Shown: positions 13,060 to 60,966 of the stretch, piece after piece
Layout of the letters: each line of letters starts with the position of its first letter
Numbering within the stretch: position 1 is the stretch's first letter
Virus record (IMG/VR): IMGVR_UViG_3300032245_001746
Location: 62,001 to 126,000 of that record
Length of the DNA: 64,000 bases
Reading direction: 5' to 3' (one strand)
Program-made: the position numbers and the translations under genes
The notes under the pieces: model-generated
The model's input: only the letters and a program-made list of their open reading frames with translations
Told to the model about the DNA's origin: nothing
The model's database searches: none

Positions 13060-13584
13060 TTATGTTTTTTGACTGCATCTAAAAACGATAGAATATCTTT
13101 TATTTTCTACTGGAATAATAGAATGCATCCATTTATATCGTATTTCATTTCTCATTACTACTAAACTTCTAGCTTTTAATTCAACAATAAAAGATTCATT
13201 CTTCTTGTTGAATTTCATCATAGCATTACTTAAAAGGCTTAATACTATAATTACTTCTCCACTATTCATACTATCAATATGAGGTTTTATTTCTTGACCT
13301 TTTAAGTATTCATTAATTGATATTGAATCTGGTTTTTGTTTAATAAAACCAGATTCAAATATTTTTAAATTAATATTTTCAAGATAATCAGGAATGGTTT
13401 TAGATATCATATTCCCAGGATATGGAATATTACTGCCATATCGTTTTATGCTATTTCTTTCTTTTTGTTTAGCAACTCTATCTTTTTTATCGTCGATTAT
13501 ATTTAATATTAATGATTCTTCTTCTATAGAAATAAAATCATCAATAACAAATAATCCTAATTGTTGATAATCAATCCCAAACAT
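13060..13584 (-). CDS. AlkB-family 2OG-Fe(II) dioxygenase
   Basis: INEY..GQEIKPHID, LSL, WMHSI, RYSIVFR (HxD...H...R). Confidence 0.85.
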   Translation of the reverse strand: MFGIDYQQLGLFVIDDFISIEEESLILNIIDDKKDRVAKQKERNSIKRYGSNIPYPGNMISKTIPDYLENINLKIFESGFIKQKPDSISINEYLKGQEIKPHIDSMNSGEVIIVLSLLSNAMMKFNKKNESFIVELKARSLVVMRNEIRYKWMHSIIPVENKRYSIVFRCSQKT

Positions 13585-16500
13585 AATAAGTCCATTTACT
13601 AATGGGATTTTTATATCTCATTCTTACTTTAAAATTATTTACAGGCTTGTCAATAACAACAGTGAAATTTCCACCTTCGTTAAGTTGTACAACTTCTTGT
13701 ACAACAATATCATTCCAATCAGTATATCTTTCATTTGCCATGTAATCTTCGTGCCACTGAACTTCAATTTGATCAGCAGTTAATGTAATTTCTTCTTCGT
13801 TGTAATTTGAAGGAACGAGAATACCAGTGTGTTCTTCATTATAACCTATAAAATAATTACCTGGAATTGGGTTTTTACCAAATTTTTGTAATGTAAGTCC
13901 ACCACTTGCTCTAAATTGCCCTATGCTTGTAGCATATAAAAGACTATCCCCATCAGGTTCTAAATTATCTAAATAAGCCAATGTGTAAGTATGATCATTA
14001 TCATAAGACATAAGAATTAAAGCATTACCAGTGGATGCTAAAGCACGAATTGCAAAATTATAAATTTGATTGTTATCTACAAAAACAGTTGGTCCTTTTT
14101 TATTTTCTAATTGATTTATTATTTCTCCAGTACTAGGATTAATTTCAGCTAATTCTGGAATTTGTGAAAATGTGGCAAATAATCTATCGCCAACAAATGC
14201 TAATCCTCTACATTCTGCCCAATGAAATTGATCAGAAATTGAAGTAGCTACACCATCATTTGTTATTGAATGTAAACCTTCATTGGATGCAACTAAAAAT
14301 TTATTATTTTTATAATATGTCATACAATGAGGTTGATTTAATCCAGGTTTGTAATTAATAAATTCAGATGCCATTCCATCGAAATAGTCAGTAAAAGCAA
14401 ACATATTAGGAATGTTTTCTGTTATGTTTGTCACTGAACTATTTAAATTTGATAATATATTTTCAATGGTCATACTTGGACCAGTTATAGTATTTAAAAA
14501 ACTATTTCCAATTGTACGTGCCTGTTCAGATGTAATTTCGTTATTTATATTATCTCCGTTATCTATACTTGAAAATAATAAATAATAAATATAATCAACA
14601 CCTGAAAGATTGCTTATCTTATGAAAATCTTGGTAAGTACTGTAACTTATTTCTTGCATTACTCCTGATTTAGTTGGAATAATAATCAAATGATTAACAG
14701 AAGGATCGCCGCTATTATAAATTTTTTTGAAATAACCTGTGTGTCCATTATTTAATGTTATAACATCTTCAGCGGCAAGTCCACTTCCATCTGCGCCTAT
14801 TTGACCATATATCGAAAAAGAAGTTATATCAATATCTTTTGCAACCATTACAAATAAGCCTGAATACATGTTTGTGAAGTACCGACTACCAGGACCAAAA
14901 TAATCATATTCATCTTCATAAGAATGACCATCAGTTATTACACCATCAGCTATTTGATTGAAAGCTTCCCAATCGTACTCAGTTTGTTGAGTATGTGTGT
15001 ATTCAATAAAACCATTATTTGATCTGTTTGTTCCAAGGAAATTTCCTCGGTCATACATGTCATCTCCACCATCATCAATATATGATTCTGTCTGAAATTC
15101 AGTTCCATTGACTTTAATTGATCCTGATAAATCTATTGGTGTAACTTCAAGTGTGTCTAAATTCAATTTTTCAAACACTAAATTAGTTTCATCATAATCT
15201 GAAGTATCTACCGCACGCATACAAAGATGGTAAATATGTCTATCTATTGGATTAAATGCGACAGATTGATATTCTTCAATATTACAGCAAACTTTAGTGT
15301 CAACAATTAAATCCCCTACAATTCCTTCGTCGCTTAAATAATTCAAAGCACTTAAATCATTGTTTGATTGTTGTATTATTAATTGATTTTCTTCATTAAT
15401 ATTGATAGAAGTCAATGCTCTGTAATTTATTGAAAGTTGTGAAATAAACGAGTATTGATTAGTTTGTGTTATTACATTTGTTACCGAAATTGTAGTAATT
15501 GCAAATATTCCTTCTGTATCCACACCTTGTAGTTCAAGTGTAATTAAATGCTCGCCAGTAGTTAAGTTAACAGAAACATCTCCAGAACCAGTTCCATAAC
15601 AATTAACTGTTTCTAATGTTGTTCCGTTTGATTTTACAAATAAATCACCATATACATTTGAAGAAAAATTATAAGAAAAAGATAAAACGCTATTTTCACC
15701 AACATTAAAATTTTGTGTCAAAATATTAGTTTGACCAGAAATGAAATTTGTTCTTATATCTGAAGCATCTCGTGACCATTGTGTGCCAACCCAACCATGA
15801 TTATCATCATCAAAACCACTAGTATATGTGTTAGATTCTGATGTGCTTTCTATTTTAGCCAAAATCATACCACTATAACCTTGTTCATTTGTCGCATAAA
15901 GAATTGCATGTAAATTACCATTGTGTTCGGTTAAACTATGTCCTTCTAATAAATTATAACCATCAATTGTCATTTCAAACAATGGTGATTCATTTAGTAA
16001 TAGACCATTTGTTGGATCAAGTACATATATTTGAATTGGTCCTTGATAATTATTATCAAATAATCCAACTAAGACATTATTATAGTAATACATTCCTCTA
16101 ATGCTATTATTAGCACCACTTAATTGTGTTACAGTTCCATTTGTTTCTATTTGATAGAAAGAACAATCAGTAGCTAATAAAAATACACCTGTAGGTGGAT
16201 AATAACACATAGTTTTTACAGAACAATTAAAGTCATTAGAAGTTAAAGGTATGTTGATTATTTCTAAAGTTTCTGTATTAATATATTCAAATTCATACCC
16301 TTGATAAGAATCTCTATTTTTTCTTATCATTCTATAAATTAATCCATTGTGAAAAGCAATTGCATGATTTGTTTCATAAACATTTTCATTTGTAAAAGTT
16401 TTTAATTTGTTTGTATAAAACTCATCTCCATAATTTATTGCATAAAGAGTATTTGCTTCTGATAAATTATCATTTACATTTTCTGTAAGACCATATAATT

Positions 16501-16909
16501 GAAAGTCTGCAAGTTGCCATATTGACATACTTGCTTCTGAATAATTATTTGAATAATTTGAATTTTTAAAATGTCTAACTTTTATTTCAATTGTATCATT
16601 AGGTGATACATCAATAATTGTTTCATTATTGTTGTTTTCAACAATAATGGTTTCCCAATAAGTATTATTTATGTTATATTGTAGTTCAGTGCCCAAATTA
16701 GATTGATTAGTCCAATTAACAATAATGCCTAAGTTTTCTAAACTTAAATTTAAATTTTTCACATCAGGAATGTCATTATTTAAGTTTGTTGTTTGATATG
16801 GGTATAATTGATATCTACAAACTGTTATTACAGAAACCCAAGCGTTTTTTAAATATACCCATTTAATTTCTCTTATAACATTGTTTTTATCCAAACATCT
16901 ATATGTCAT
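13571..16909 (-). CDS. Large beta-rich protein, probable virion/adhesion protein; paralog of 24628-27558
   Basis: Shares long blocks with the paralog, e.g. YFTNMYSGLFVMVAK and MRYKNPISKWTYY.WD. Confidence 0.6.
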   Translation of the reverse strand: MTYRCLDKNNVIREIKWVYLKNAWVSVITVCRYQLYPYQTTNLNNDIPDVKNLNLSLENLGIIVNWTNQSNLGTELQYNINNTYWETIIVENNNNETIIDVSPNDTIEIKVRHFKNSNYSNNYSEASMSIWQLADFQLYGLTENVNDNLSEANTLYAINYGDEFYTNKLKTFTNENVYETNHAIAFHNGLIYRMIRKNRDSYQGYEFEYINTETLEIINIPLTSNDFNCSVKTMCYYPPTGVFLLATDCSFYQIETNGTVTQLSGANNSIRGMYYYNNVLVGLFDNNYQGPIQIYVLDPTNGLLLNESPLFEMTIDGYNLLEGHSLTEHNGNLHAILYATNEQGYSGMILAKIESTSESNTYTSGFDDDNHGWVGTQWSRDASDIRTNFISGQTNILTQNFNVGENSVLSFSYNFSSNVYGDLFVKSNGTTLETVNCYGTGSGDVSVNLTTGEHLITLELQGVDTEGIFAITTISVTNVITQTNQYSFISQLSINYRALTSININEENQLIIQQSNNDLSALNYLSDEGIVGDLIVDTKVCCNIEEYQSVAFNPIDRHIYHLCMRAVDTSDYDETNLVFEKLNLDTLEVTPIDLSGSIKVNGTEFQTESYIDDGGDDMYDRGNFLGTNRSNNGFIEYTHTQQTEYDWEAFNQIADGVITDGHSYEDEYDYFGPGSRYFTNMYSGLFVMVAKDIDITSFSIYGQIGADGSGLAAEDVITLNNGHTGYFKKIYNSGDPSVNHLIIIPTKSGVMQEISYSTYQDFHKISNLSGVDYIYYLLFSSIDNGDNINNEITSEQARTIGNSFLNTITGPSMTIENILSNLNSSVTNITENIPNMFAFTDYFDGMASEFINYKPGLNQPHCMTYYKNNKFLVASNEGLHSITNDGVATSISDQFHWAECRGLAFVGDRLFATFSQIPELAEINPSTGEIINQLENKKGPTVFVDNNQIYNFAIRALASTGNALILMSYDNDHTYTLAYLDNLEPDGDSLLYATSIGQFRASGGLTLQKFGKNPIPGNYFIGYNEEHTGILVPSNYNEEEITLTADQIEVQWHEDYMANERYTDWNDIVVQEVVQLNEGGNFTVVIDKPVNNFKVRMRYKNPISKWTYYVWD

Positions 16910-16962
16910 TATAATAACTCCATTATTTTATTTTATTTTATTTTATTTTAAATTGGATATTT

Positions 16963-17235
16963 TTAATCTTTAATAGTTTTTAATTTATGTTCTTTTAAAA
17001 AACCTCTAGGACCTGTTACTTCAATTTCAGTTAATTCTTGAATTAATTTCAATTTATCGATCATTTCTTGACTTGCATCAAATGTGCAAAACCAGTGAGT
17101 CTCTGGTTTTTCGCCTGTTTCTGACAATCCAATTCCTAATATTCTTGGATGATTAGCAAAAGCTTCAATTTCCAATCTAGCTTTATTTCTAGCTAATTCA
17201 ACATCTTCATTTTTTGCTAAAATACATATTTGCAT
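16963..17235 (-). CDS. 90-aa hypothetical protein; paralog of 24343-24615
   Basis: ILGIGLSETGEKP.THWFCTFDASQEMIDKLK is shared. Confidence 0.8.
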   Translation of the reverse strand: MQICILAKNEDVELARNKARLEIEAFANHPRILGIGLSETGEKPETHWFCTFDASQEMIDKLKLIQELTEIEVTGPRGFLKEHKLKTIKD

Positions 17236-20601: not shown

Positions 20602-20683
20602 GCGTTGATATGGCAAGTGGATAAAGCCGGGTGACTGTAAATCACTTCTTAATTGTTCGGGGGTTCGAATCCCTCTCAACGCA
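20602..20683 (+). tRNA. tRNA-Tyr(GTA)
   Basis: GCGTTGA/TCAACGC; GGTGA-CTGTAAA-TCACT; T-loop TTCGAAT. Confidence 0.9.
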
Positions 20684-20689
20684 CTTTAT

Positions 20690-20776
20690 AGATGGTTTTA
20701 CTATTGGCTAGGTTAACTTAGTTGGAAACTAAGAAGGCGTTAATTCGCTTTACAAGTTCGATTCTTGTACCATCTG
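20690..20776 (+). tRNA. tRNA-Ser(GGA)
   Basis: AGATGGT/ACCATCT, G73; CTTAG-TTGGAAA-CTAAG; long variable arm. Confidence 0.85.
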
Positions 20777-20784
20777 TTTTATTT

Positions 20785-20866
20785 AGAGTCGCTTCAATGT
20801 GGGTATTGGAGAAGTCTGTAAAACTTCTGCCCTATGGGCAAAACAGTTCGATTCTGTACGACTCTA
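20785..20866 (+). tRNA. tRNA-Tyr(GTA)
   Basis: AGAGTCG/CGACTCT; GAAGT-CTGTAAA-ACTTC; variable arm TGCCC/GGGCA. Confidence 0.85.
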
Positions 20867-20880
20867 CTTGTTGTTATTTT

Positions 20881-20970
20881 AGATGGGTAGACCTATTGGT
20901 AGGTCAGATTATTTGCTAAATAATTAGGGCGGGTCAAACCGTCTTGCAAGTTCGATTCTTGTCCCATCTG
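20881..20970 (+). tRNA. tRNA-Ser(GCT)
   Basis: AGATGGG/CCCATCT, G73; ATTAT-TTGCTAA-ATAAT; long variable arm. Confidence 0.88.
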
Positions 20971-20990
20971 CTTGGTTTTTTATTTTATAT

Positions 20991-21081
20991 AGATTGGTAA
21001 CTGGACAGGCGTGCCAGCATTGTTTTGAAAACAATTGGAGCCATTGAGAAATGGCTTGGGATTCGATTTCTCACCTCTCTG
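20991..21081 (+). tRNA. tRNA-Ser(TGA), two acceptor-stem mismatches
   Basis: ATTGT-TTTGAAA-ACAAT; long variable arm; AGATTGG/CCTCTCT, G73. Confidence 0.75.
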
Positions 21082-21101
21082 CTTTGTTTATTTTATAATA
21101 T

Positions 21102-21177
21102 GGACGGTGAGCTAGTGTGGTCATTTAAGCGGAAATTTGAAAGATTTCAGAACTCAGTTCGATTCTGAGACCGTCCA
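21102..21177 (+). tRNA. tRNA-Phe(GAA)
   Basis: GGACGGT/ACCGTCC; GAAAT-TTGAAAG-ATTTC; CTCAG-TTCGATT-CTGAG. Confidence 0.85.
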
Positions 21178-21247
21178 CTTTTAAAGAATTTATAAAATTC
21201 GAACATTATTTTTCTTAAAATTAAATACGCTATTACTGTAATAGTGT

Positions 21248-21964
21248 ATGAGCAAAATAATTTATACAAAAGAAGTGTTAGAAAAAGCAGTAAAAGAAGC
21301 AAGTTACTTAACTGAAGTATTTAAAATACTTAATGCAAGACAAGGAGGAAATACTTATCAAAGAATAAAAATATTAATTAAAGAGTATAAAATAGACACA
21401 TCTCATTTTTTGAATGGAAAATATAAAGGATTTTTAAAATCTGGAATTGCTAATAAAAAATGTCATTTAAAAATCCTTGTAAATGATAAATCTAGAAATA
21501 GAAGAGAAAGTAGTTATTTATTAAAACGTGCATTAATAGAAAGTGGTCGAATTCATGTTTGTGAATGCTGTGGTTTGAAACCTGAATGGAATGGTAAAGA
21601 ATTAACACTTCAAGTTGATCATATAGATGGAAATTGGTTAGATAATAGAAAAGAAAATTTAAGATTTTTATGTCCTAATTGTCATACTCAAACAAAAACA
21701 TTTGGAAATCAAAAGGAACAAAAAAAATGTGAAAATTGTAACATGAAAATAGGAAGAAAATCTCGATGGTGTAAGCGTTGTTTTCCATTATTTGTTTTTA
21801 TAAATAAAAGAAAAGTAAAAGACAGACCAGAATTACATGTATTAAACCAAGAAGTAAAAGAACTTGGGTATGTAGGAACTGGTAGAAAATATGGCGTAAG
21901 TGATAATGCTATTAAAAAATGGATTAAAACAGAAACTAAAAAATTAAATATTACAAATAAATAG
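21248..21964 (+). CDS. HNH homing endonuclease inside the tRNA array
   Basis: CECCG..WNGKELTLQVDHIDGNWLDNRKENLRFLCPNCH; C-terminal HTH (GRKYGVSDNAIKKW). Confidence 0.9.
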   Translation: MSKIIYTKEVLEKAVKEASYLTEVFKILNARQGGNTYQRIKILIKEYKIDTSHFLNGKYKGFLKSGIANKKCHLKILVNDKSRNRRESSYLLKRALIESGRIHVCECCGLKPEWNGKELTLQVDHIDGNWLDNRKENLRFLCPNCHTQTKTFGNQKEQKKCENCNMKIGRKSRWCKRCFPLFVFINKRKVKDRPELHVLNQEVKELGYVGTGRKYGVSDNAIKKWIKTETKKLNITNK

Positions 21965-21982
21965 TAAATATAGTGTTTATAT

Positions 21983-22065
21983 GTTCGCGTGATGAAATTT
22001 GGGATACATGATGGTCTAAGAAGCCATTGCCGTAAGGCTTGCAGGTTTGATTTTTGTCGCGAACA
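21983..22065 (+). tRNA. tRNA-Leu(AAG)
   Basis: GTTCGCG/CGCGAAC; ATGGT-CTAAGAA-GCCAT; variable arm GCC-GTAA-GGC; weak T-arm. Confidence 0.75.
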
Positions 22066-22079
22066 CTTGTTGTTTTTAT

Positions 22080-22154
22080 GCTGTAGTACGCAAATAGGCA
22101 AAGCGGCAATACTTAAAATATTGTGATTCTGTCGTTCGACTCCGATCTACAGTA
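22080..22154 (+). tRNA. tRNA-Leu(TAA), short variable arm, imperfect T-stem
   Basis: GCTGTAG/CTACAGT; CAATA-CTTAAAA-TATTG. Confidence 0.7.
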
Positions 22155-22168
22155 CTTGTTATTTTTAT

Positions 22169-22242
22169 GCTCATGTGATGCAATTGGCAGACATTTCTCG
22201 TTTAAACCGAGGATCTTACAAGTTCAAGTCTTGTCATGAGCA
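22169..22242 (+). tRNA. tRNA-Leu(TAA), short variable arm
   Basis: GCTCATG/CATGAGC; TCTCG-TTTAAAC-CGAGG; ACAAG-TTCAAGT-CTTGT. Confidence 0.8.
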
Positions 22243-22251
22243 CTTTTATAT

Positions 22252-22329
22252 GCTTACGTGATGCAATTTGGTAGACATCTTTCGCTTAAAACGAAAGTTT
22301 TTTTGTAGGTTCGAGTCCTATCGTAAGCA
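22252..22329 (+). tRNA. tRNA-Leu(TAA), short variable arm
   Basis: GCTTACG/CGTAAGC; TTTCG-CTTAAAA-CGAAA; GTAGG-TTCGAGT-CCTAT. Confidence 0.85.
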
Positions 22330-22333
22330 CTAT

Positions 22334-22406
22334 CGGTCAATAACAATGATGGTTCATGTAGTCGTCTGAAGAACGACAAATCCCAGATCGTAACTGGGTT
22401 GACCGG
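22334..22406 (+). tRNA. tRNA-Phe(GAA), atypical T-loop and G73
   Basis: CGGTCAA/TTGACCG; GTCGT-CTGAAGA-ACGAC; CCCAG-ATCGTAA-CTGGG. Confidence 0.7.
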
Positions 22407-22415
22407 CTTTTATAT

Positions 22416-22499
22416 GTCCATGTGGTGAAATTTGGCAGCCACGCCAGCCTAAGAAACTGGTTCCTTAATGGAGTGTAGGTTCAAATCCTATCATGGACA
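22416..22499 (+). tRNA. tRNA-Leu(AAG)
   Basis: GTCCATG/CATGGAC; CCAGC-CTAAGAA-ACTGG; variable arm; GTAGG-TTCAAAT-CCTAT. Confidence 0.8.
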
Positions 22500-22513
22500 C
22501 TTGTTATTTTTAT

Positions 22514-22596
22514 GCCCATGTGATTGAAATTGGTAAACTTGGAAGTTTTAGAAACTTTCGCCTTCGGGCTTGCAGGTTCAACCCCTGTCGTGGGCA
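22514..22596 (+). tRNA. tRNA-Leu(TAG)
   Basis: GCCCATG/CGTGGGC; GAAGT-TTTAGAA-ACTTT; long variable arm. Confidence 0.85.
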
Positions 22597-22616
22597 CTTA
22601 TTATATTATTAAAAAT

Positions 22617-22690
22617 GGCTCAGTAGGCAACGGAAGACCACTTTTACTCAAAATAAAAGATGATTGTGAGTTCGACTCTCACCTGAGTTA
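22617..22690 (+). tRNA. tRNA-Leu(CAA), short variable arm
   Basis: GGCTCAG/CTGAGTT; TTTTA-CTCAAAA-TAAAA; GTGAG-TTCGACT-CTCAC. Confidence 0.8.
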
Positions 22691-22794
22691 CTTATATACA
22701 ATTATACTGTGAACAAATAGCAAATCTTACTAGGTTATTCTAGTGCTCATCAAACGTTGAAATAAATAATCTAAGTTATAATTGTATATTTTTT

Positions 22795-22879
22795 GGATTA
22801 GATTGAAAGCGGCTATTCTACTAAATTTCGAAAATTTAGAACTATTTTTAGTTTGCGAGTTCGACTCTTGCCTAATCCG
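22795..22879 (+). tRNA. tRNA-Ser(CGA)
   Basis: GGATTAG/CTAATCC, G73; TAAAT-TTCGAAA-ATTTA; long variable arm. Confidence 0.8.
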
Positions 22880-22913
22880 TTTTTAAAATTTAAGTTATTA
22901 TAATAAATATATT

Positions 22914-23733: not shown

Positions 23734-24340
23734 TATATTTTTCCCAAATTTTATTACTTAATCTTACTCTAGAGTCATTTTCGTTCCATCCTAAATCAGC
23801 ATAAGGTATAACAAATCCATAACTTAAATGAATTTTACTTTTATCAGATTTATCCATCCAGTGTTGATAAAAATTAGCTTCAAAACAATATAAATCAAAC
23901 TTTTCAATAAGTAATTTTTCTTTATCTATGTAAATGTAATCTAAATCTGGACCATCAACAGATATGTTACATTTATAAGTAATATATCCTGGCAATCCCA
24001 CATCATAATGTTTTTTAACTTCGCCACCACTTCCTAGATAAATATATTGAAAAAACATATTTTCTTTATTAAGATTGATTTTTTTAGCTATTCTGTCAGC
24101 TATATTTATAAAAATTTCAGAAACATAATCTATTTGTGTAGTATCACCTTGATGTTTAGATATTTCTTTAGAAATATTTGATTTTGTAATATCATAAAGA
24201 AAAGTCCATCCGTTTGATGCTTCATTTAAAGCTTTAACATTTTTATTTTCAATTTCTGTTTTTGTTTTAATAAAAGATTTGGAAAAATCTATAATTTCTT
24301 TTGCTTCATCTGTGGTAATAAAATTATTTATTGTCTTCAT
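23720..24340 (-). CDS. 2OG-Fe(II) oxygenase-like protein
   Basis: INNFIT..E N-terminus, GGEVKKHYD, YKCNI, YQHW. Confidence 0.65.
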   Translation of the reverse strand: MKTINNFITTDEAKEIIDFSKSFIKTKTEIENKNVKALNEASNGWTFLYDITKSNISKEISKHQGDTTQIDYVSEIFINIADRIAKKINLNKENMFFQYIYLGSGGEVKKHYDVGLPGYITYKCNISVDGPDLDYIYIDKEKLLIEKFDLYCFEANFYQHWMDKSDKSKIHLSYGFVIPYADLGWNENDSRVRLSNKIWEKYIKLN

Positions 24341-24342
24341 GT

Positions 24343-24615
24343 TTAACCTTTAATTAATGATAATTTAAATTTTTTTAAAAAACTTCTAGGATTTGTAACT
24401 TCTATTTCTGTAAATTCTTGAATAGATTTCAACTTATCTATCATTTCTTGGCTTGCATCAAACGTACAAAACCAATGAGTAATAGGCTTCTCGCCAGTTT
24501 CAGACAATCCTATTCCTAAAATTTGATAATGATTTGCAAATTTTTCAATTTTTTGTCTTGCTTTTTCTCTTACAACTTCAATGTTTTCATTTTTTGCTAA
24601 TATACAAACTTGCAT
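24343..24615 (-). CDS. 90-aa hypothetical protein; paralog of 16963-17235
   Basis: Near-identical core; AGGAG RBS. Confidence 0.8.
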   Translation of the reverse strand: MQVCILAKNENIEVVREKARQKIEKFANHYQILGIGLSETGEKPITHWFCTFDASQEMIDKLKSIQEFTEIEVTNPRSFLKKFKLSLIKG

Positions 24616-24627
24616 TATTTCTCCTTT

Positions 24628-27558
24628 TTAATCCCAAGTATAATAAGTCCATTTACTAATTGGATTTTTATAACGCATTCTTAATTTAAAGTTAGATGTT
24701 GGTTTATCTACAATAACCCACCACCATTCTGTATCTTGTTGTATTACTTCTAATACATTAACGTTTTCCCAACCTATATAACTTTGATCAGCGTTTCCAT
24801 CAGAATTCCATTGAACTTCTAAATTTTCTTTATTTGGCTCTTCACTTGTTGGTCCAACTTCTATAAGAGTTGTTGTTTCATCATAACTCCAATACCATGC
24901 ACCTTCAGGACGTTCTTTTCCAAATAGTTCAGCAACAAGTCCACCAACAATTTTAAACGTTCTAATACTAGTTGCGTAAATTATATTAAATTCGTCAGGT
25001 TGTAAATTATCAATAACTGCTAGTGTATAATTTTGATTTCCATCATAAGAAATAATATACAAATCATTTCCTACTGCTGCCATACTTTTTGTTGAATAAT
25101 GATTTATTGAATTATTATCAACCCAAACTATTGGTCCCTTTTTATCTTGTACTTCATTTATAATTTCTCCAGTATTTGGGTCTAATTCTGCTATATTTGC
25201 AACACTATCATAACCTGCATACAATCTGTTTTCAATGAAAGCTAGTGATGAGCAATCATAAAAATGCCATGCATTATTTAAGTAATTTATTACACCATTT
25301 TTATTAATAGAATAAAATCCTCCATTATTTCCAACAATTAAAAAAGAATTGTTATTTTTATAAACCATACATCTAGGATTTTGTAATCCTGGTCTATTTC
25401 CAACAGGAAAATTTTGTTCTCCATTATTTTGATCAACAAATAGATAAATATTTTCTATATTTGATGTTATTTGATTTACATTCGCATTTAATGCCGATAA
25501 AGCATCAGATGCAGTATTAGAATTAAATATAACCGACAAGAAACTATTTCCAATTATTTGTGCCAAATTTTCTGAAACTTCAGATCCATCATAAGGAGAA
25601 AAAGTTGAAAACAATAAATAATAGATATGATTAGTATTTTCTAAGCCTGATATTTCATGAAAATCTTGATTTGTATCTGCAACTATATTTGATAATATAC
25701 CTGTTCTGGTTGGAACAATAATAAGATGGTTTACTGATGAACTATTTGTTCCATATGTTTTTTTAAAATAACCAGTATATCCACCATTTAGTGAAATTGA
25801 ATGTTGATTCACAATTCCATTACCATCTGCTCCCAAATCACCAGATATGGTAAAACTATTAATATTAATATTTTTAGCCACCATAACAAATAAACCTGAA
25901 TACATATTTGTAAAATATTCTGAATTTTCTCCAAAATATAAAGTTCCATCTGCTACAACTCCATCAGCAATCTCTGTAAATTCACTACTTTCTTGTTGAG
26001 TATGAGTATATTGTATAAATCCATTTTCGATAATGTTGGTATTTAAAAAATTACCAGTATCAAACATATTATTTCCACCATCACTTATATAAGAAGTAGT
26101 AGAATGTAAAACTCCTTTTATATACACATCACCCGAAATGTTTATTTGTGTTATTTCTAATGTATTTGGGTTGAATTTTTCAAAATTCAATTCCATTTGA
26201 TCTTCTATATCTAATTCTTGGTCATAACCTTCTACTCTCATTGAAGCATGATAAATATTTCTATCAATAGGATTAAATGCAATACATGGATATCTTTCTC
26301 TATTACAACACATACTTGTATTTATTATTTCATTTCCCACTTGACCAGAGTCACTTAAAAAGTATAAAGTGTTATTTTGAATATTTTGAACAATTAATTT
26401 TGATTCTCCATTTACTATTGCTGATGAAATTAGATTATATCCATCAGATAATGTTGAAATAAATGAAACATTTTCTTGAACAAGATCTATAGTAATTAAA
26501 ATAAGACCATCATATTCTTCTGGCTCAACGGCACTTAAAATCGCATAAAATAAGCCATTATAATATTCTAAGCTATGTATATCGGTTAGAGTATATTGAT
26601 TTATAGTAGAGTTAGCCCAATGAAGAGTTGTACGATCTCCGTTTGATGTATCAACTTCATATAAACCAATAGTTCCATTATCATTATAAAGAGTGAAATA
26701 AGCTTCGTTGTTGCTAGTAAAACCTTTATTTGAAGTATTATTATTTGAACTAAGTCTTGTAACTGTTCCATTTGTTTCTAATTGAAAAAACCCACAATTA
26801 GAACTTACAAAAAAATTATTATTTTGTAAGTTAAAACACATTGAGGCACCGTTACATAAAGTATATTCACCAGAATAGTTTAATGGAATTGGATTTACTT
26901 GATTTGTTATTAAATTAATATGTTCAAATTCAATTCCAGAATAATCATCTCTCGTACGATAAACAAGTCTATAAATTGAGCTAATATTAGCTGGGACAGA
27001 GCCTAAAGCATATTCATCTTCAAATACATTTTCTTCTAAAAATGTTATTATTTTATTAGGTGTAAAATCTTGGTTTTCTGAATTAAAATTATATAATGTA
27101 TTACCTTTTAAATCAGGTAATCCAGTGCCAGATAATCCATATAAAGTAAAATCAATTAATTCCCAAGTAGTTATTGATGCTGTTGTATAATTTTTTGAAA
27201 ATCTATCATTATTATCTATAAATCTGACTTTAACTTCTATTGTAGAATTAGGTTGTAAATCATAAATAATAGTATTTTGATTTTTTTCAATTATACTTAC
27301 ATTCCATTCGCCTTCTGATAATTTAATAGATATTTCAGTAAAATATGATAAATTATTTATCCAAGAAATAATTAAACCTAAATTTTCAAATTCTAAATTT
27401 AATCCTGTAACATCTGGAATATCATCAACTAATTTGATTACATTTGTTATTGGGTATAATTTATAAGTACAAACAGTTATAACTGGTATCCATGCATCTT
27501 TACGATAAATCCAAGTTATATTTCTAACTATTTTATTATCTTTGCACTTAAAAGTCAT
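24628..27558 (-). CDS. Large beta-rich protein; paralog of 13571-16909
   Basis: Collinear similarity from N- to C-terminus. Confidence 0.6.
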   Translation of the reverse strand: MTFKCKDNKIVRNITWIYRKDAWIPVITVCTYKLYPITNVIKLVDDIPDVTGLNLEFENLGLIISWINNLSYFTEISIKLSEGEWNVSIIEKNQNTIIYDLQPNSTIEVKVRFIDNNDRFSKNYTTASITTWELIDFTLYGLSGTGLPDLKGNTLYNFNSENQDFTPNKIITFLEENVFEDEYALGSVPANISSIYRLVYRTRDDYSGIEFEHINLITNQVNPIPLNYSGEYTLCNGASMCFNLQNNNFFVSSNCGFFQLETNGTVTRLSSNNNTSNKGFTSNNEAYFTLYNDNGTIGLYEVDTSNGDRTTLHWANSTINQYTLTDIHSLEYYNGLFYAILSAVEPEEYDGLILITIDLVQENVSFISTLSDGYNLISSAIVNGESKLIVQNIQNNTLYFLSDSGQVGNEIINTSMCCNRERYPCIAFNPIDRNIYHASMRVEGYDQELDIEDQMELNFEKFNPNTLEITQINISGDVYIKGVLHSTTSYISDGGNNMFDTGNFLNTNIIENGFIQYTHTQQESSEFTEIADGVVADGTLYFGENSEYFTNMYSGLFVMVAKNININSFTISGDLGADGNGIVNQHSISLNGGYTGYFKKTYGTNSSSVNHLIIVPTRTGILSNIVADTNQDFHEISGLENTNHIYYLLFSTFSPYDGSEVSENLAQIIGNSFLSVIFNSNTASDALSALNANVNQITSNIENIYLFVDQNNGEQNFPVGNRPGLQNPRCMVYKNNNSFLIVGNNGGFYSINKNGVINYLNNAWHFYDCSSLAFIENRLYAGYDSVANIAELDPNTGEIINEVQDKKGPIVWVDNNSINHYSTKSMAAVGNDLYIISYDGNQNYTLAVIDNLQPDEFNIIYATSIRTFKIVGGLVAELFGKERPEGAWYWSYDETTTLIEVGPTSEEPNKENLEVQWNSDGNADQSYIGWENVNVLEVIQQDTEWWWVIVDKPTSNFKLRMRYKNPISKWTYYTWD

Positions 27559-27688
27559 TAATTAATCCTTTTATTAGATTTGTATGTTTTAATTATATAT
27601 TAAAAACAAATAATTTTAAAAAACATCTTTATCATAATAATTAATAAACTTATACTATTTTTAAAGCAGTTTAAACAGGTAATTTATA

Positions 27689-28111
27689 ATGAAAAAAATT
27701 TCTTTTGATTTTGATGACACACTCGCTAATAGTATTAGTGTCCCATATTTTGGATTGGATGGCGAAATATATTATTCTGAATTACATTTTCCTATTGAAA
27801 AAATATTTAAATTTCTTAAAAAATGTCATGACAAGAATCATGATTGTATCATATTAACAGCTAGAGAAGAAAATGATAAAAATATTAATATAATTAATAA
27901 ATTTTTAAAAGATTATGGTGCATTTGATATGATTAGTAAGGTTTATTTTACTAATCATAAATATAAAGGTGATTTTATTAAAAAACATAATATTAATATA
28001 GATCTTCATATTGATGATGATAATGATCATTTAGAATCACTAAGAGAGCATAAAATAAATGGGATTTCATCATTATATGAATCTTGTATTTATGAAAATC
28101 TTGATATATGA
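27689..28111 (+). CDS. HAD-superfamily phosphatase
   Basis: ISFDFDDTL, ILTAR, K, HIDDD. Confidence 0.8.
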   Translation: MKKISFDFDDTLANSISVPYFGLDGEIYYSELHFPIEKIFKFLKKCHDKNHDCIILTAREENDKNINIINKFLKDYGAFDMISKVYFTNHKYKGDFIKKHNINIDLHIDDDNDHLESLREHKINGISSLYESCIYENLDI

Positions 28112-28199
28112 TAATTAAAGTTTACAACAAGCATTATATTTATTTTAATAAAATTTGTAAAAATTTATAAAAATATGTAAAAACATACTATATAAAGTA

Positions 28200-28781
28200 A
28201 TGAATAAAATTAAATTGTCAACCTATGCTAAAAGAAATAATCTGTGCTATCGCACTGCATATAATTACTTTCACTCCGGAACACTTAAAGGCGAACAACT
28301 TGAATCTGGTACTATCCTAGTTTATGATGATCAAAAAGATAAATCAAAAATTGAAAAAGTTGCAATTTATTGCAGAGAATCAACCTCTGAAAATTCTAGC
28401 TCTTTAAATAACCAAATTCAAAGAGTATCTGATTTTTGTACTGCAAAAGGTTGGATTATACACAAAATTATAAAAGAAATCGGAAGCGGACTAAATGATA
28501 AAAGACCAAAATTTTTATCATTATTAGAAGATACTTCAATAACAAAAATTGTTGTAGAACACAATGATAGATTTTGTAGATTTGGAATAGAACCAATAAA
28601 AATATTACTCAAATCACAAGGAAGAGAATTAATTATAATTAATGAAGTAACTAATGATAAAGAAGATTTAATTCAAGATTTTGTTTCAATAATAACATCT
28701 TTTTGTGCAAGAATTTATGAACAAAGAAGAACCAAAAAAGCAACTGAAAAACTAATCAAGGAATTAAATGAAATTAGTTGA
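28200..28781 (+). CDS. tnpA: IS607 TnpA serine recombinase
   Basis: N-terminal HTH, AIYCRES, EIGSGLNDKR, DRFCRFG, DFVSIITSFCARIY. Confidence 0.93.
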   Translation: MNKIKLSTYAKRNNLCYRTAYNYFHSGTLKGEQLESGTILVYDDQKDKSKIEKVAIYCRESTSENSSSLNNQIQRVSDFCTAKGWIIHKIIKEIGSGLNDKRPKFLSLLEDTSITKIVVEHNDRFCRFGIEPIKILLKSQGRELIIINEVTNDKEDLIQDFVSIITSFCARIYEQRRTKKATEKLIKELNEIS

Positions 28782-29970
28782 AATTCATAATTTTAAAAAG
28801 AACTCTAAACAATATAAAGAACTTGATGAAATATTATTTAAATCAAAAAATGTTTATAATTCTGCATTATATGTTTGGAGACAATATTACATCAAAGAAA
28901 ATAAATTTATTTCTTTGAATGAAACTTATCATATAATAAAAAATTATGAATGTTACAAACAACTTCCTCAAAATGTATCAACTCAAACTTTGAAATTAAC
29001 ATTTCAAAACATTAATTCTTATTTCAAAGCAATTAAATCATATAATAAAAACCCAAATAAATTTTTAGGAAAACCTAAATTACCAAAATATAAAGACTCA
29101 ATAAAAGGTAGAATTATTGCTGTTTATACTTCAAGAGTAATAAGAAAAAAAGATTTTAATAAAGGAAAAATTCAATTAACAGGATTATCTTTTTCCATTC
29201 CAACAAAAATTGAAAATTATAATGATATAAAACAAGTAAGAATAATTCCTTCAATTAATTCTATTAAAATTGAAATTGTCTATAATAAACAAGAAAAGAA
29301 AATTAAGAAGAATAAAAAATTAGCTGCAATTGATTTAGGTTTAAATAATTTATCAACACTTTGTTTTAATGAAGTAAAAAATAAACCAATAATTATAAAT
29401 GGGAAGCCATTAAAATCAATTAATCAATATTACAATAAAAAGAAATCAAAATTACAATCAAAATTACATAACAATAAAAGAACAAGTAAAAACATATTAA
29501 AATTAACAGAAAAAAGAAACAATAAAATTAAAGATTATCTTCACAAATCATCAAGATGTTTAGTGAATCAATTAGTTTCTAAAAATATATCCAAGCTCAT
29601 TATAGGATATAATAAAGGATGGAAACAAGACATTAATATTGGTAAAAAGAACAATCAAAATTTTGTAAATATTCCATTTTTACATTATATTAATCAATTA
29701 AAATATAAATGTGAATTAGAAGGGATAGAAGTAATTTTAAACGAAGAGAGTTATACGTCTAAATGTTCTTTTATTGATATGGAAGATGTTAAAAAGCATG
29801 ATTCATATGTAGGTAAAAGAATAAAAAGAGGTTTATTTAAATCTAAAGGTGGAATATTAATTAATGCAGATTTAAATGGATCGTATAATATAATGAGAAA
29901 AGTAGTTCCTAATGTTTTTAACAAGGGAATAGAGGGTTTTGTGGTAAGTCCAAAAGTGATATCGCTTTAA
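28768..29970 (+). CDS. tnpB: TnpB RNA-guided nuclease
   Basis: AIDLGLNN (RuvC-I), IIGYNKGWKQ, EESYTSK, NADLNGSYNI (RuvC-III). Confidence 0.93.
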   Translation: MKLVEIHNFKKNSKQYKELDEILFKSKNVYNSALYVWRQYYIKENKFISLNETYHIIKNYECYKQLPQNVSTQTLKLTFQNINSYFKAIKSYNKNPNKFLGKPKLPKYKDSIKGRIIAVYTSRVIRKKDFNKGKIQLTGLSFSIPTKIENYNDIKQVRIIPSINSIKIEIVYNKQEKKIKKNKKLAAIDLGLNNLSTLCFNEVKNKPIIINGKPLKSINQYYNKKKSKLQSKLHNNKRTSKNILKLTEKRNNKIKDYLHKSSRCLVNQLVSKNISKLIIGYNKGWKQDINIGKKNNQNFVNIPFLHYINQLKYKCELEGIEVILNEESYTSKCSFIDMEDVKKHDSYVGKRIKRGLFKSKGGILINADLNGSYNIMRKVVPNVFNKGIEGFVVSPKVISL

Positions 29971-30253
29971 AAGAAGATATTTACATGTTTTCTATAACCA
30001 TCATGGTAATTATCCAAAAGATTCTGTTTATATTGGTAGAGGATCTTGTTATGGTAATCCGTTCATAATAGGAAAAGATGGTACAAGAGAAGAAGTTATA
30101 AAAAAATATATTGATTTGATAGAATCTGATGAAAAGCTTAAAAAGTTAATAATACAAAGATTAAAAGGTAAAAATTTACTTTGTTTTTGTTCGCCAAAAC
30201 CTTGTCATGGTGATTATTTATTAAAAATTTGCAATGAATAAAATATATAAAAT

Positions 30254-31030
30254 ATGAGACTCGGAATATGCTATATGGTTTTTGATGGCGATGAATTATT
30301 AGAATTTGCCATTAAAAGTATAAGAAATGTTGTTGATTTTGTATCTGTTACATATCAAAAAGTATCCTATTTTGGAAATCCAGCAGATCCTAATTTGCTT
30401 CCTTTGTTAGAAAATCTAAAAAAACAAGGATTAATTGATGAAATTCTTCATTATGAAACAAATTTAGGTATACATCATAAACAAAATGAACTAAATTTAA
30501 GAAATTTAGGACTTGAAGCTTCTAAAAAAGCTGGCTGTACACACCATATATCCGCAGATGTTGATGAATTTTATAAACCAGATGAATTAACTTTTGCTAA
30601 AAATTATATGGCAGAAAATGATCACGATTTTTCTGCTGCATATTTGTATACTTATTATAAAGAACCAACTTACTTAGTTTATCCTGTTCAAAAATTATTG
30701 GTTTCTTTTATACATCCTGTACATAACGAATATAGAATGGATGTTCCATATCCTACTTTTCCTTTACATATGGAAACCACTCGTAGATTTGGAAAATGTA
30801 AAAATTATCATATTTTTGATCAAAATAATTTTATGATTCATCATATGAGCTATATTAGAAAAGATATAAGGAAAAAATTTCAAAACTCCGATAATGCTCA
30901 ATTTTATAAAATAGAAAAATTTATCAATAACTTTGATAAATACAAATTAGGAGAACGTGTGTGCTTACTCCCTGATTTTATGAATCGAAAAACAATAGAA
31001 GTTGATAATTATTTTAACATAAAAATATAA
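30254..31030 (+). CDS. GT-A fold glycosyltransferase (GT2-like)
   Basis: RNLGL...ISADVDEFY (DxD), HHMSYIR. Confidence 0.7.
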   Translation: MRLGICYMVFDGDELLEFAIKSIRNVVDFVSVTYQKVSYFGNPADPNLLPLLENLKKQGLIDEILHYETNLGIHHKQNELNLRNLGLEASKKAGCTHHISADVDEFYKPDELTFAKNYMAENDHDFSAAYLYTYYKEPTYLVYPVQKLLVSFIHPVHNEYRMDVPYPTFPLHMETTRRFGKCKNYHIFDQNNFMIHHMSYIRKDIRKKFQNSDNAQFYKIEKFINNFDKYKLGERVCLLPDFMNRKTIEVDNYFNIKI

Positions 31031-60215: not shown

Positions 60216-60725
60216 TTAACATTCATCAGAAAGATATGCTCTGGCATATCTTAATGTAACATCACAACTAACAACTTCACTATTTTCCATATCTAAATCA
60301 CCAAAATCTATTTCTAATGGCCAAACGTTTTCAAATATCCAACGTTCAAGTACAGAACCAATACCATCATATAACTCTAAATAAGCGGTTTTAAAAAAAT
60401 TATTATCAACTGGATATATTGAATTTCCACTACATGGATTATAAAGTTTTTTAAACCATTCTAAAACAGGATGTTTGTTTTTTTTCAAATCATATAAAGT
60501 TAAATTAATTGGTTTCATTTCAACTTTACCTGGTATATAAATAGTTTCATTTAAATGTTCTAAAGATATTTCTTTATATGACATTTTAGGTCTTGATGCC
60601 TTGCTAGGTGGCAACGAATCAACACCAGAAGCACTTATGTTTGGAATCATAAATAACCATCTGTGTTTTTGCTTAATACAAATATCACTTTTTTCTAAAC
60701 CATAACCTAAACCCATATTTGGCAT
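60216..60725 (-). CDS. gp19-like tail tube protein (native start ATG 60725)
   Basis: RP, Y.PGK, I.LTLYD, LELYDGIG...W, WP.EIDFGDLD, VTLRY. Confidence 0.85.
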   Translation of the reverse strand: MPNMGLGYGLEKSDICIKQKHRWLFMIPNISASGVDSLPPSKASRPKMSYKEISLEHLNETIYIPGKVEMKPINLTLYDLKKNKHPVLEWFKKLYNPCSGNSIYPVDNNFFKTAYLELYDGIGSVLERWIFENVWPLEIDFGDLDMENSEVVSCDVTLRYARAYLSDEC

Positions 60726-60941
60726 AATATTATTTCCATAAAATCTAGAAAAATACATAAAAATCAACTATAATAAAGCATTAATGAATCAATTAGTTTC
60801 ATAAGAAACAAGACATTAATAATTAATTGTGTTAAAAAAAGTAGTTCCTAATGTTTTTAACAAAGGAATAGAGGGCTTTGTGGTAAATCCAAAAGTAATT
60901 TAAATTTAAATATAATATATTTACATATTTTCTAAAACCAT
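60726..60941 (+). mobile_element. 216-bp non-autonomous derivative of the IS607 element
   Basis: 60841-60941 resembles the IS right end 29902-30001; internal patches TGAATCAATTAGTTTC and GAAACAAGACATTAATA match tnpB; similar left end; CAT at both junctions. Confidence 0.88.
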
Positions 60942-60966
60942 AAATTCCTCACTATTTACTTATAAT

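What the first reader, a model, noticed from the sequence alone, without database searches (positions are those of the whole stretch)
28108..30241. IS607 splits a DUF4326 gene; two insertions predict a GCAT target/TAM and two omegaRNA guides
Seen: precise removal restores MIIKVYNKHHGNYPKDSVYIGR...CHGDYL. Both insertion sites have GCAT immediately 5' (ACAAGCAT, TTTGGCAT) and both elements end in AACCAT. The part best kept in the miniature is the last ~100 nt. Established: the TnpB omegaRNA derives from the right end, with the 3' flank as guide and the 5' flank as TAM. Inference: crossover core within CAT, TAM ending in GCAT, guides starting CATGGTAATTATCCAA and AAATTCCTCACTATTT. One TnpB could then cut IS-free alleles at both loci in co-infecting phage.
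Basis: partly seen in the sequence, partly recalled or inferred. Interest (0 to 1): 0.6.

Follow-up and report, generated by a model that had tools for sequence, protein, structure and literature searches.

The report
Phage IS607 transposon targeting GCAT sites
A known kind of small jumping gene (IS607, which carries an RNA-guided DNA cutter) sits inside one gene of a giant freshwater phage and a decayed copy sits in front of a tail gene; uninterrupted versions of both sites in other samples show it inserted next to GCAT, not the GG usual for this family.

Summary
The full element is 28135-30001 (1867 bp): tnpA is an IS607-type serine recombinase and tnpB has an intact D-E-D triad. It splits a DUF4326 gene after codon 9. 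A 216-bp derivative (60726-60941) sits between the ribosome-binding site and the ATG of a gp19-like tail-tube gene.

I found natural IS-free alleles of both loci in other metagenomes. (intact 88-aa protein, MTIKVYNKHHGNYP...) and ...TGGCAT|AAATTCC.... No duplication is left except the shared CAT. Three more relatives also have GCAT 5' of the left end, and all right ends finish in ACCAT.

This mirrors the published Clostridium botulinum IStron (CboIStron; target TGGG, right end TCGG), but with a CAT core instead of GG. The last ~107 nt form stem-loops supported by compensatory changes.

Still inferred: that the TAM is GCAT, and that TnpB cuts empty alleles.

The second guide is doubtful. The miniature has 3 of 18 conserved pairs broken, folds weakly, and descends from a different lineage than the resident full copy.

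Verdict: a real, well-delimited new variant (non-GG core) of a known system. Interest is moderate.

The parts
28108..28134 (+). 5' fragment of the DUF4326 gene (MIIKVYNKH). Its ATG overlaps the stop of the upstream HAD-like gene (ATGA).
   Evidence: The intact homologues P0121-P0126 start M(T/V)KVYNKHH.
28131..28134 (+). GCAT target motif at the left junction: the candidate TAM. CAT (28132-28134) is the block shared with the right end, the candidate crossover core.
   Evidence: Present in the empty alleles L119 and L120. The same motif lies 5' of the left ends of L098, L100 and L101.
28135..30001 (+). Full IS607-family element, 1867 bp. The boundary is ambiguous by up to 3 nt because of the shared CAT.
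   Evidence: The empty-site alignment joins 28134 to 30002 exactly. An X7 contig stops at 30001 and continues into a different flank (record 22).
28135..28199 (+). Left end with three 10-bp-phased direct repeats (TTTGTAAAA, TTTATAAAA, TATGTAAAA at +20, +30, +40). These are presumed TnpA binding sites.
   Evidence: The same phasing is seen in L098 and L100. That they bind TnpA is inferred.
28200..28781 (+). tnpA: IS607-type serine recombinase, 193 aa.
   Evidence: Pfam Resolvase 4.8e-17. NCBIfam NF033518, 173.6 bits against a cut-off of 110.
28768..29970 (+). tnpB: RNA-guided nuclease family, 400 aa. RuvC triad D189/E327/D368. No zinc-finger cysteines.
   Evidence: Pfam OrfB_IS605 plus Cas12f1-like_TNB. 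NF040570, 161 bits. Triad invariant in 20 relatives. The profile hits TnpB/Cas12f-like structures.
29895..30001 (+). Predicted omegaRNA scaffold. SL1 pairs 29905-29910 with 29925-29930. SL2 pairs 29934-29939 with 29946-29951. SL3 pairs 29953-29958 with 29963-29968. SL4 is 29972-29993. The tail is ATAACCAT.
   Evidence: RNAalifold gives 18 pairs, 9 with compensatory changes. 92.7% of cells are paired, against 25-55% when partners are slid, and 0 of 500 shuffles reach this. SL4 comes from single-sequence folds only.
30002..30021 (+). Predicted guide 1 (CATGGTAATTATCCAAAAGA), templated by the 3' flank.
   Evidence: Position inferred by analogy with CboIStron and ISXfa1. Unique in the 320-kb record. 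Perfect 53-nt match in the empty allele L120.
30002..30241 (+). 3' fragment of the DUF4326 gene: 79 codons plus stop.
   Evidence: PF14216 2e-22. 100% identical to residues 10-88 of P0121.
60216..60725 (-). gp19-like tail-tube gene. Its ATG (60725-60723) is the CAT of the second GCAT target.
   Evidence: PF06841 on the called 169-aa product..
60726..60941 (+). Miniature derivative: left end, two tnpB-internal scraps, then the last ~106 nt of the right end. No ORF.
   Evidence: Covariance model R1 scores it 101 bits, against 123 for the full copy. The insertion is proven by the empty alleles L122 and L123.
60942..60961 (+). Predicted guide 2 (AAATTCCTCACTATTTACTT). It contains the reverse complement of the tube gene's Shine-Dalgarno sequence (GAGGAA, 60945-60950).
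   Evidence: Unique in the record. Whether it functions is doubtful.

Best explanation
Shown. An IS607-family insertion sequence (tnpA serine recombinase plus tnpB) inserted into a roughly 530-kb freshwater myovirus-like megaphage. It entered by conservative recombination at a CAT shared between the target (GCAT) and the element's right end (CCAT), leaving no duplication and splitting a dispensable DUF4326 gene. An older, related copy at a second GCAT site has decayed to 216 bp. Related phage strains carry both sites empty.

Inferred. The last ~107 nt of the element, which overlap the 3' end of tnpB, are transcribed with the flank and processed into an omegaRNA. Its guide is the 3' flank. TnpB uses it to cut DNA in which (R)GCAT directly abuts that flank. 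That configuration is the vacated donor site after TnpA excision, or the IS-free allele of a co-infecting relative. The break is then repaired from an IS-bearing genome copy, so the element is retained or spreads. The occupied locus escapes cutting because CCAT replaces GCAT at position -4. The resident TnpB most likely has one good guide (locus 1). The miniature's guide module is probably impaired.
For: Identity of the element.

Boundaries and empty sites.

Recurrent GCAT at left flanks (window full copy, window miniature, L098, L100, L101) and ACCAT at all six right ends. In L101 the frame of a split N6_N4 methyltransferase reads through the junction.

Published precedent in the same family. 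For CboIStron the target and the TAM are both TGGG, the right end is TCGG, and self/non-self is decided by one G/C. ISXfa1 has a GG crossover and a GGG TAM.

Sister subfamilies show the same G-versus-C contrast with other cores: GTAT against CTAT, and GTG against CTG.

Nuclease: triad D189/E327/D368 is invariant, with a profile match to TnpB/Cas12f-like structures.

RNA: three stem-loops with 9 compensatory pairs, 0 of 500 shuffles. The full copy has 0 of 18 pairs broken.

Targets: each guide is unique in the record, and the empty alleles match perfectly for 42-53 nt after GCAT.
Against: - No RNA, cleavage or TAM data exist; no RNA run holds the locus.
- L097's left flank is probably TTCCAT, so G at -4 is not absolute for insertion.
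- For the sister subfamilies no empty sites are known, so their 'G' could belong to the element rather than the target.
- This TnpB clade lacks the zinc-finger cysteines.
- The stems overlap coding sequence, so part of their conservation is protein-driven.
- The host is unknown and the phage uncultured, so co-infection and homing are conjecture.
- Only two copies are present in the 320-kb part of the genome that is held.
Confidence: 0.62

Rival explanations
1. Both right ends give working guides: the resident TnpB also loads the miniature's RNA and cuts the IS-free tail-tube locus.
For: The miniature keeps the last 106 nt, still scores 101 bits with the covariance model, and ends in AACCAT next to a unique flank. 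A sigma-70-like hexamer pair (TAGAAA-17-TATAAT) lies in its left end on the correct strand. Empty alleles with a perfect protospacer exist.
Against: Three of 18 conserved pairs are broken, two of them specific to the miniature when compared with its nearest relative L099. Its fold is -12.5 kcal/mol, z -0.2, and SL3 and SL4 are lost. It descends from a different lineage than the resident TnpB. It is antisense to the late structural operon. Promoter-like hits are no more frequent than in shuffled sequence.
Confidence: 0.25
2. GCAT is the preference of the TnpA recombinase only. The TnpB TAM is something else: shorter (CAT), longer, or unrelated.
For: TnpA and TnpB specificities are separate proteins' properties. 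L097 seems to have inserted at CCAT. In CboIStron only GG was strictly required for integration, while the TAM was stricter.
Against: In every IS605 or IS607 system tested, the TAM equals the target motif. A TAM of plain CAT would let TnpB cut its own occupied locus (CCAT plus guide match), which selection should remove.
Confidence: 0.2
3. The tnpB is a passenger with no nuclease role in the phage: either inactive, or repurposed as an RNA-guided regulator like TldR.
For: Zinc-finger cysteines are absent. Phage-borne TnpB derivatives acting as transcription factors are known (one search lists those papers).
Against: The protein is full length. The catalytic D-E-D is invariant across 20 relatives down to 54% identity. 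It is still paired with tnpA and intact ends. The guide matches only its own flank, as expected for homing rather than regulation.
Confidence: 0.08
4. The shared CAT is a 3-bp target-site duplication made by a staggered cut, not a crossover core.
For: The sequence data cannot formally distinguish the two: an occupied site reading GCAT-[element]-CAT-flank fits both.
Against: The transposase is a serine recombinase of the IS607 equivalog, whose mechanism is conservative exchange at a shared core. The 'duplicated' triplet is always CAT in all six relatives, whereas real duplications vary with the site.
Confidence: 0.05

Closest known systems
CboIStron, the IS607-family element of Clostridium botulinum (bioRxiv 10.1101/2023.11.20.567912)
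   Same: A serine-recombinase TnpA plus TnpB. Scarless insertion and excision. The omegaRNA spans the 3' end of tnpB and the right end. The target motif and the right end differ by one G/C just 5' of the shared core (TGGG against TCGG there, GCAT against CCAT here). The guide is the 3' flank. Gene-interrupting insertions occur. TnpA-less derivatives occur beside full copies.
   Different: The core is CAT, not GG. There is no group I intron (Rfam), so the split gene is not rescued by splicing. The host replicon is a lytic-type megaphage rather than a plasmid. TAM and cleavage are untested here.
ISXfa1 and canonical IS607/IS1535 (PMC10711439; review PMC13565253)
   Same: The IS607 transposase equivalog. 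Repeat units in both ends. No terminal inverted repeats and no duplication. An RNA of about 100-150 nt from the right end.
   Different: The literature describes the family as integrating 'strictly' at GG, with G-rich TAMs (GGG, AGGAG, GAGGG). This element and its sister groups use A/T-rich cores (CAT, TAT, TG). RAGATH-18 and other Rfam models do not detect its RNA.
Free-standing homing endonucleases of T-even phages (Seg, Mob), as summarised in PMC13565253
   Same: A proposed outcome of the same kind: cut the allele that lacks the element in a co-infecting relative, then spread by recombinational repair, with possible exclusion of nearby markers.
   Different: Recognition would be RNA-guided plus a 4-5 nt motif rather than protein-only. 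The element can also transpose. No co-infection evidence is available here.

Membership tests
IS607 family insertion sequence | Serine-recombinase transposase of the IS607 type (N-terminal DNA-binding part followed by a resolvase catalytic domain) | tested here: met
   NF033518 equivalog, 173.6 bits against a cut-off of 110, covering residues 8-180. Pfam Resolvase covers 54-179.
IS607 family insertion sequence | tnpB immediately downstream of tnpA, on the same strand | tested here: met
   tnpA is 28200-28781 and tnpB is 28768-29970, overlapping by 14 nt.
IS607 family insertion sequence | No terminal inverted repeats and no variable target-site duplication; scarless relation to the empty site | tested here: met
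   The empty alleles L119/L120 and L122/L123 join the flanks exactly. Only the constant CAT is shared.
IS607 family insertion sequence | GG core dinucleotide at the insertion site and the element terminus | tested here: not met
   The junctions read GCAT|TA... and ...CCAT|CA or ...CCAT|AA, with no GG. The review states that GG is the rule. The element is therefore filed as a variant rather than a canonical member.
IS607 family insertion sequence | Repeated subterminal motifs in both ends (TnpA binding sites) | tested here: met
   Three phased TRTAAAA repeats in the left end, and an inverted ATGTAAA about 15 nt from the right end. Binding itself was not tested.
TnpB-omegaRNA (OMEGA) RNA-guided nuclease | RuvC D-E-D catalytic triad | tested here: met
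   D189, E327 and D368 are invariant in alignment A5. The motifs align to TnpB/Cas12f-like chains.
TnpB-omegaRNA (OMEGA) RNA-guided nuclease | Structured RNA encoded across the 3' end of tnpB and the right end | tested here: met
   18 pairs, 9 of them compensatory. 92.7% paired against at most 55% when slid. 0 of 500 shuffles.
TnpB-omegaRNA (OMEGA) RNA-guided nuclease | The RNA is actually produced and bound, and TAM-dependent cleavage of the donor joint occurs | not testable with these tools
   No RNA run holds the locus. Only contigs were available.
IStron (IS plus group I intron) | A group I intron fold spanning the element's ends | tested here: not met
   No intron match in Rfam at the gathering threshold or at E<=1. 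The left end is only 65 nt long before tnpA.
MITE-like non-autonomous derivative | Both ends kept, coding capacity lost, inserted at the family's target motif | tested here: met
   216 bp with no ORF, GCAT target, and empty alleles known. Whether it moved as a miniature or decayed in place is not resolved. The two separate internal scraps favour decay in place.

The most novel reading that the evidence does not exclude
In giant freshwater phages, IS607/TnpB elements with an A/T-type core act as RNA-guided homing elements between co-infecting relatives. TnpB cuts the GCAT-flanked IS-free allele, which demonstrably circulates in nature with a perfect protospacer. Recombination-dependent repair then copies the element, and perhaps neighbouring markers, into the rival genome. 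This would be an RNA-programmed equivalent of T4 Seg/Mob marker exclusion, and it would supply a new non-G-rich TAM (RGCAT) for a compact 400-aa nuclease.
Probability: 0.3. Interest if true: 0.7.

Novelty: new variant of a known kind. Interest (0 to 1): 0.45.

Why it matters
1. It is a fully delimited natural example. Occupied and empty alleles are in hand for two loci, and they show that IS607-family elements are not restricted to GG cores and G-rich targets, as current reviews state. The 'G in the target, C in the right end' self/non-self contrast seen in CboIStron appears here with the cores CAT, TAT and TG.

2. It gives a concrete, cheap test: a predicted RGCAT TAM for a 400-aa TnpB, with a defined ~107-nt scaffold.

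3. It places an RNA-guided nuclease, its transposase and its natural targets in competing strains of an uncultured megaphage. That setting makes phage-phage homing by TnpB testable from metagenomic reads.

4. It also shows that a miniature copy should not be assumed to supply a working guide.

Tried and rejected
- IStron idea: no group I intron, RAGATH-18 or any other Rfam match in 27900-30300 at E<=1.

- More copies by DNA pattern. Three strict right-end patterns found nothing in viral or metagenome contigs. A loose right-end pattern gave 150 matches, but only two real right ends (L163, L254), and both contigs are cut before the left end.

- TnpB relatives in viral contigs. Most are at most 55% identical. 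The large 44-46% group is not IS607 at all (see the noticed items), so I did not use it for the target logo.

- L097 left boundary. No long ORF reads through any candidate junction. The best reading is TTCCAT|TATG, and it remains uncertain.

- Promoter and terminator scans: no more hits than in shuffled sequence, so uninformative in this 26% G+C DNA.

- PDB search with the single TnpB sequence gave nothing; only the profile worked.

- Reads. No RNA run was listed. The four runs laid were contigs only. X5 contigs stop at both element borders (27677-28124 and 30000-30257) and X7 record 22 stops at 30001, which is consistent with the boundaries but not decisive. The joints listed are low-similarity pieces from other elements.

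- Exact look-up of the window's own tube protein returned only the same phage; the 99% relative was needed.

- Lak megaphage kinship, suggested by the tnpB DNA hits, is not supported. The tail sheath is nearest to T4-like and SP-15-like phages at about 34% identity.

- Operators' rules. Reads were laid on 3301 letters.
Full report
CONTEXT. The window is bases 62001-126000 of a 319,857-bp IMG/VR virus record that is 63% complete. The same phage also occurs as a 530,789-bp ENA scaffold with the identical insertion. It is 26% G+C. It carries 13 tRNA genes, a T4-type sheath and two gp19-like tube genes. The sheath is only about 34% identical to SP-15/T4-like phages. Runs that share words with the locus are river, lake, freshwater and wastewater metagenomes. 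The host is unknown.

OBSERVATION.
- The DUF4326 gene starts at 28108, with its ATG overlapping the upstream stop.
- It is interrupted after ...ACAAGCAT (28134) and resumes in frame at 30002 (CATGGTAAT...), running to 30241. The 3' part matches PF14216 at 2e-22.
- Between these points lie tnpA (28200-28781) and tnpB (28768-29970). tnpA hits Pfam Resolvase and NCBIfam NF033518 'IS607 family transposase' at 173.6 bits (cut-off 110). tnpB hits OrfB_IS605 plus Cas12f1-like_TNB, and NF040570 at 161 bits.
- The element ends ...CTATAACCAT at 30001.
- The second element is 60726-60941. It is preceded by ...TTTGGCAT, ends ...CTAAAACCAT and is followed by AAATTCCTCAC.
- Its last 104 nt are 88% identical to the full copy. 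Its left end is 81% identical. Two scraps of tnpB interior survive.
- A DNA search and a covariance-model search both find only these two copies in the 320-kb record.

EMPTY SITES: THE DECISIVE RESULT. I searched with the 3' DUF4326 fragment alone, by reference; the two fragments were never joined for a search. This found an 88-aa protein, P0121, that is 100% identical over the 79 residues and begins MTIKVYNKHHGNYP. Its two contigs (L119, L120) have the same gene order: HAD-like gene, DUF4326, then the 258-aa gene. They read ...TATAACAAGCAT|CATGGTAATTATCC.... The window's left flank (92.5% identical over 518 nt) runs straight into its right flank (98.0% over 741 nt), and the match after GCAT is perfect for 53 nt.

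For the second locus, a 99%-identical tube protein (P0241) led to contigs L122 and L123. In these the Shine-Dalgarno sequence and start codon are contiguous (...GTGAGGAATTT|ATGCCAAAT...), with a perfect match for 42-48 nt after GCAT on the window's + strand.

Both insertions are therefore real, and the boundaries are exact to within the 3-nt CAT that target and right end share. GCAT is target DNA, and nothing else is duplicated.

MORE COPIES. The word-based protein search gave TnpB relatives of 90, 87, 84, 75 and 63% identity. Their contigs all show right ends finishing in ACCAT.
- Left flanks are CCAGCAT (L098), CTGGCAT (L100, a copy lacking tnpA) and CAAGCAT (L101).
- In L101 the frame of a split N6_N4 methyltransferase reads through the junction.
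- L097 is best read as TTCCAT, but this is uncertain.
- In total, five of six independent left flanks carry (R)GCAT, where the window-wide frequency of GCAT is 0.25% per position.

HOW THIS COMPARES WITH WHAT IS KNOWN. For the IS607-family CboIStron, experiments showed several things:
- TnpA integrates at TGGG through a GG core via a circular intermediate.
- The TnpB TAM found by library assay is the same TGGG.
- The omegaRNA scaffold, and so the right end, finishes in TCGG.
- The G/C difference at -3 is what spares the occupied locus.

ISXfa1 likewise crosses over at GG and has a GGG TAM. A 2026 review states that the family integrates 'strictly' at GG and that its TAMs are G-rich.

The element here has the same architecture with a different core: target GCAT, right end CCAT, shared block CAT, and G against C immediately 5' of it. 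Two sister subfamilies (TnpB about 60% identical) show GTAT against CTAT, and GTG against CTG. For these no empty site is known, so their G could in principle belong to the element. Which dinucleotide within CAT is exchanged cannot be told from sequence.

THE RNA. I aligned ten right ends from three subfamilies (A3). The alignment folds into three stem-loops upstream of the terminal ...ACCAT. There are 18 pairs, 9 with changes on both sides. 92.7% of cells are paired, against 25-55% when the 3' partners are slid, and 0 of 500 shuffles reach the observed values. Single-sequence folds add a fourth hairpin, 29972-29993. This matches the published description of consecutive stem-loops preceding the guide. 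The stems overlap the last codons of tnpB, so conservation alone would prove little; the compensatory changes are the evidence.

The full copy has no broken pair. The miniature has three (C·A in SL2; G·A and A·A in SL3). It folds at -12.5 kcal/mol (z -0.2), against -19.9 for the full copy and -20.7 for L097. Its right end is 93.4% identical to L099 but only 87.6% to the resident copy. It is therefore an older insertion of a related lineage that has been eroding. This weakens the claim that it supplies a second working guide, though it does not exclude it.

THE NUCLEASE AND THE ENDS. D189, E327 and D368 are invariant in 20 relatives down to 54% identity, and the motifs align with TnpB/Cas12f-like structures. 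The usual zinc-finger cysteines are absent from the whole clade. The left end carries three repeats (TTTGTAAAA, TTTATAAAA, TATGTAAAA) at 10-bp phasing. The right end carries an inverted ATGTAAA about 15 nt from its tip. These fit the repeat units drawn for IS607 ends, but binding by TnpA is inferred.

MECHANISM, WITH STATUS.
- Shown: identity of the genes, exact insertion points, the target motif, the absence of a scar, a conserved RNA structure, and natural IS-free alleles with perfect protospacers.
- Inferred from the family's tested members: TnpA excises and inserts via a circle by exchange within CAT. The RNA from about 29895 to about 30021 guides TnpB to (R)GCAT plus CATGGTAATT.... The occupied locus is spared by C at -4. 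The break is repaired from an IS-bearing genome, giving retention after excision and, in mixed infections, homing.
- Conjecture: that this matters in competition between megaphage strains.

CONSEQUENCES FOR THE PHAGE. DUF4326 is split after codon 9 and there is no intron to rescue it. Its 3' part is still 100% identical in protein to the intact allele, so the insertion is probably recent.

At locus 2 the native Shine-Dalgarno sequence now precedes a six-codon ORF formed by the element's right end. The tube gene's ATG follows left-end sequence that offers only a weak GGAA. Gene callers nevertheless still call the 169-aa product.

VERDICT. This is a new variant (non-GG core, phage-borne) of a known system.

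Noticed in passing
L026-L081 (e.g. L030, L038, L058, L059), viral contigs mostly from sample 3300045988: TnpB genes 44-46% identical to this one sit without any tnpA in short elements. These have terminal inverted repeats (GGTAACTATATA ... TATATAATTACC) and 8-9 bp target duplications (e.g. AATGATAG in L038, AAGACAGTG in L030), at many different sites in roughly 100-kb viral contigs. So TnpB has been captured by a TIR/TSD-type element, not IS607.
   Followed up: partly
L100:743-2880: A copy of the same family lacking tnpA (left flank CTGGCAT) has a second, different IS607-type element (its own tnpA plus tnpB) inserted into the 3' end of its tnpB. This truncates the protein to 388 aa and removes its omegaRNA region.
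   Followed up: no
L101:2494-4703: A 63%-identical relative splits an N6_N4 DNA methyltransferase gene at ...CAAGCAT|TTGAATAT... with the frame reading through. Its tnpA is reduced to a 32-aa remnant while tnpB stays full length.
   Followed up: partly
window 60942-60965 and 60726-60745 (minus strand): The miniature separates the tube gene's Shine-Dalgarno sequence (GAGGAATTT) from its ATG. The native ribosome-binding site now precedes a six-codon ORF (ATGGTTTTAGAAAATATGTAA) made by the element's right end. How the gp19-like gene is still translated is unexplained.
   Followed up: partly
window 27600-28134 against 30002-30800, compared with L120: The IS-free strain is clearly more diverged on the left of the insertion site (92.5%) than on the right (98.0%). 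This could be chance, a gene-specific rate difference, or a recombination or co-conversion boundary at the element.
   Followed up: no
window 29806-30001 (run X7, record 22): A 251-nt contig from another sample of the source study matches the right end at 96% and stops exactly at 30001, continuing for 55 nt into sequence unlike this window. That indicates a further insertion site of the same element elsewhere. The flank letters were not shown.
   Followed up: no
window 20602-22880: A cluster of 13 tRNA genes (Tyr x2, Ser x3, Phe x2, Leu x6), several of them near-duplicate neighbours.
   Followed up: no
window 13573-17235 against 24339-25202: Direct repeats of 71-81% identity link the 976-aa ORF (24628-27558, minus strand) to a paralogous region about 11 kb upstream. 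These are probably duplicated large structural or fibre-like genes.
   Followed up: no
window 28161-28133 (minus strand): The best sigma-70-like hexamer pair in the region (TTTACA-17-TATAAT, 11 of 12) lies in the left end and points outward across the insertion junction. Hits in this A/T-rich DNA are no more frequent than in shuffled sequence.
   Followed up: no
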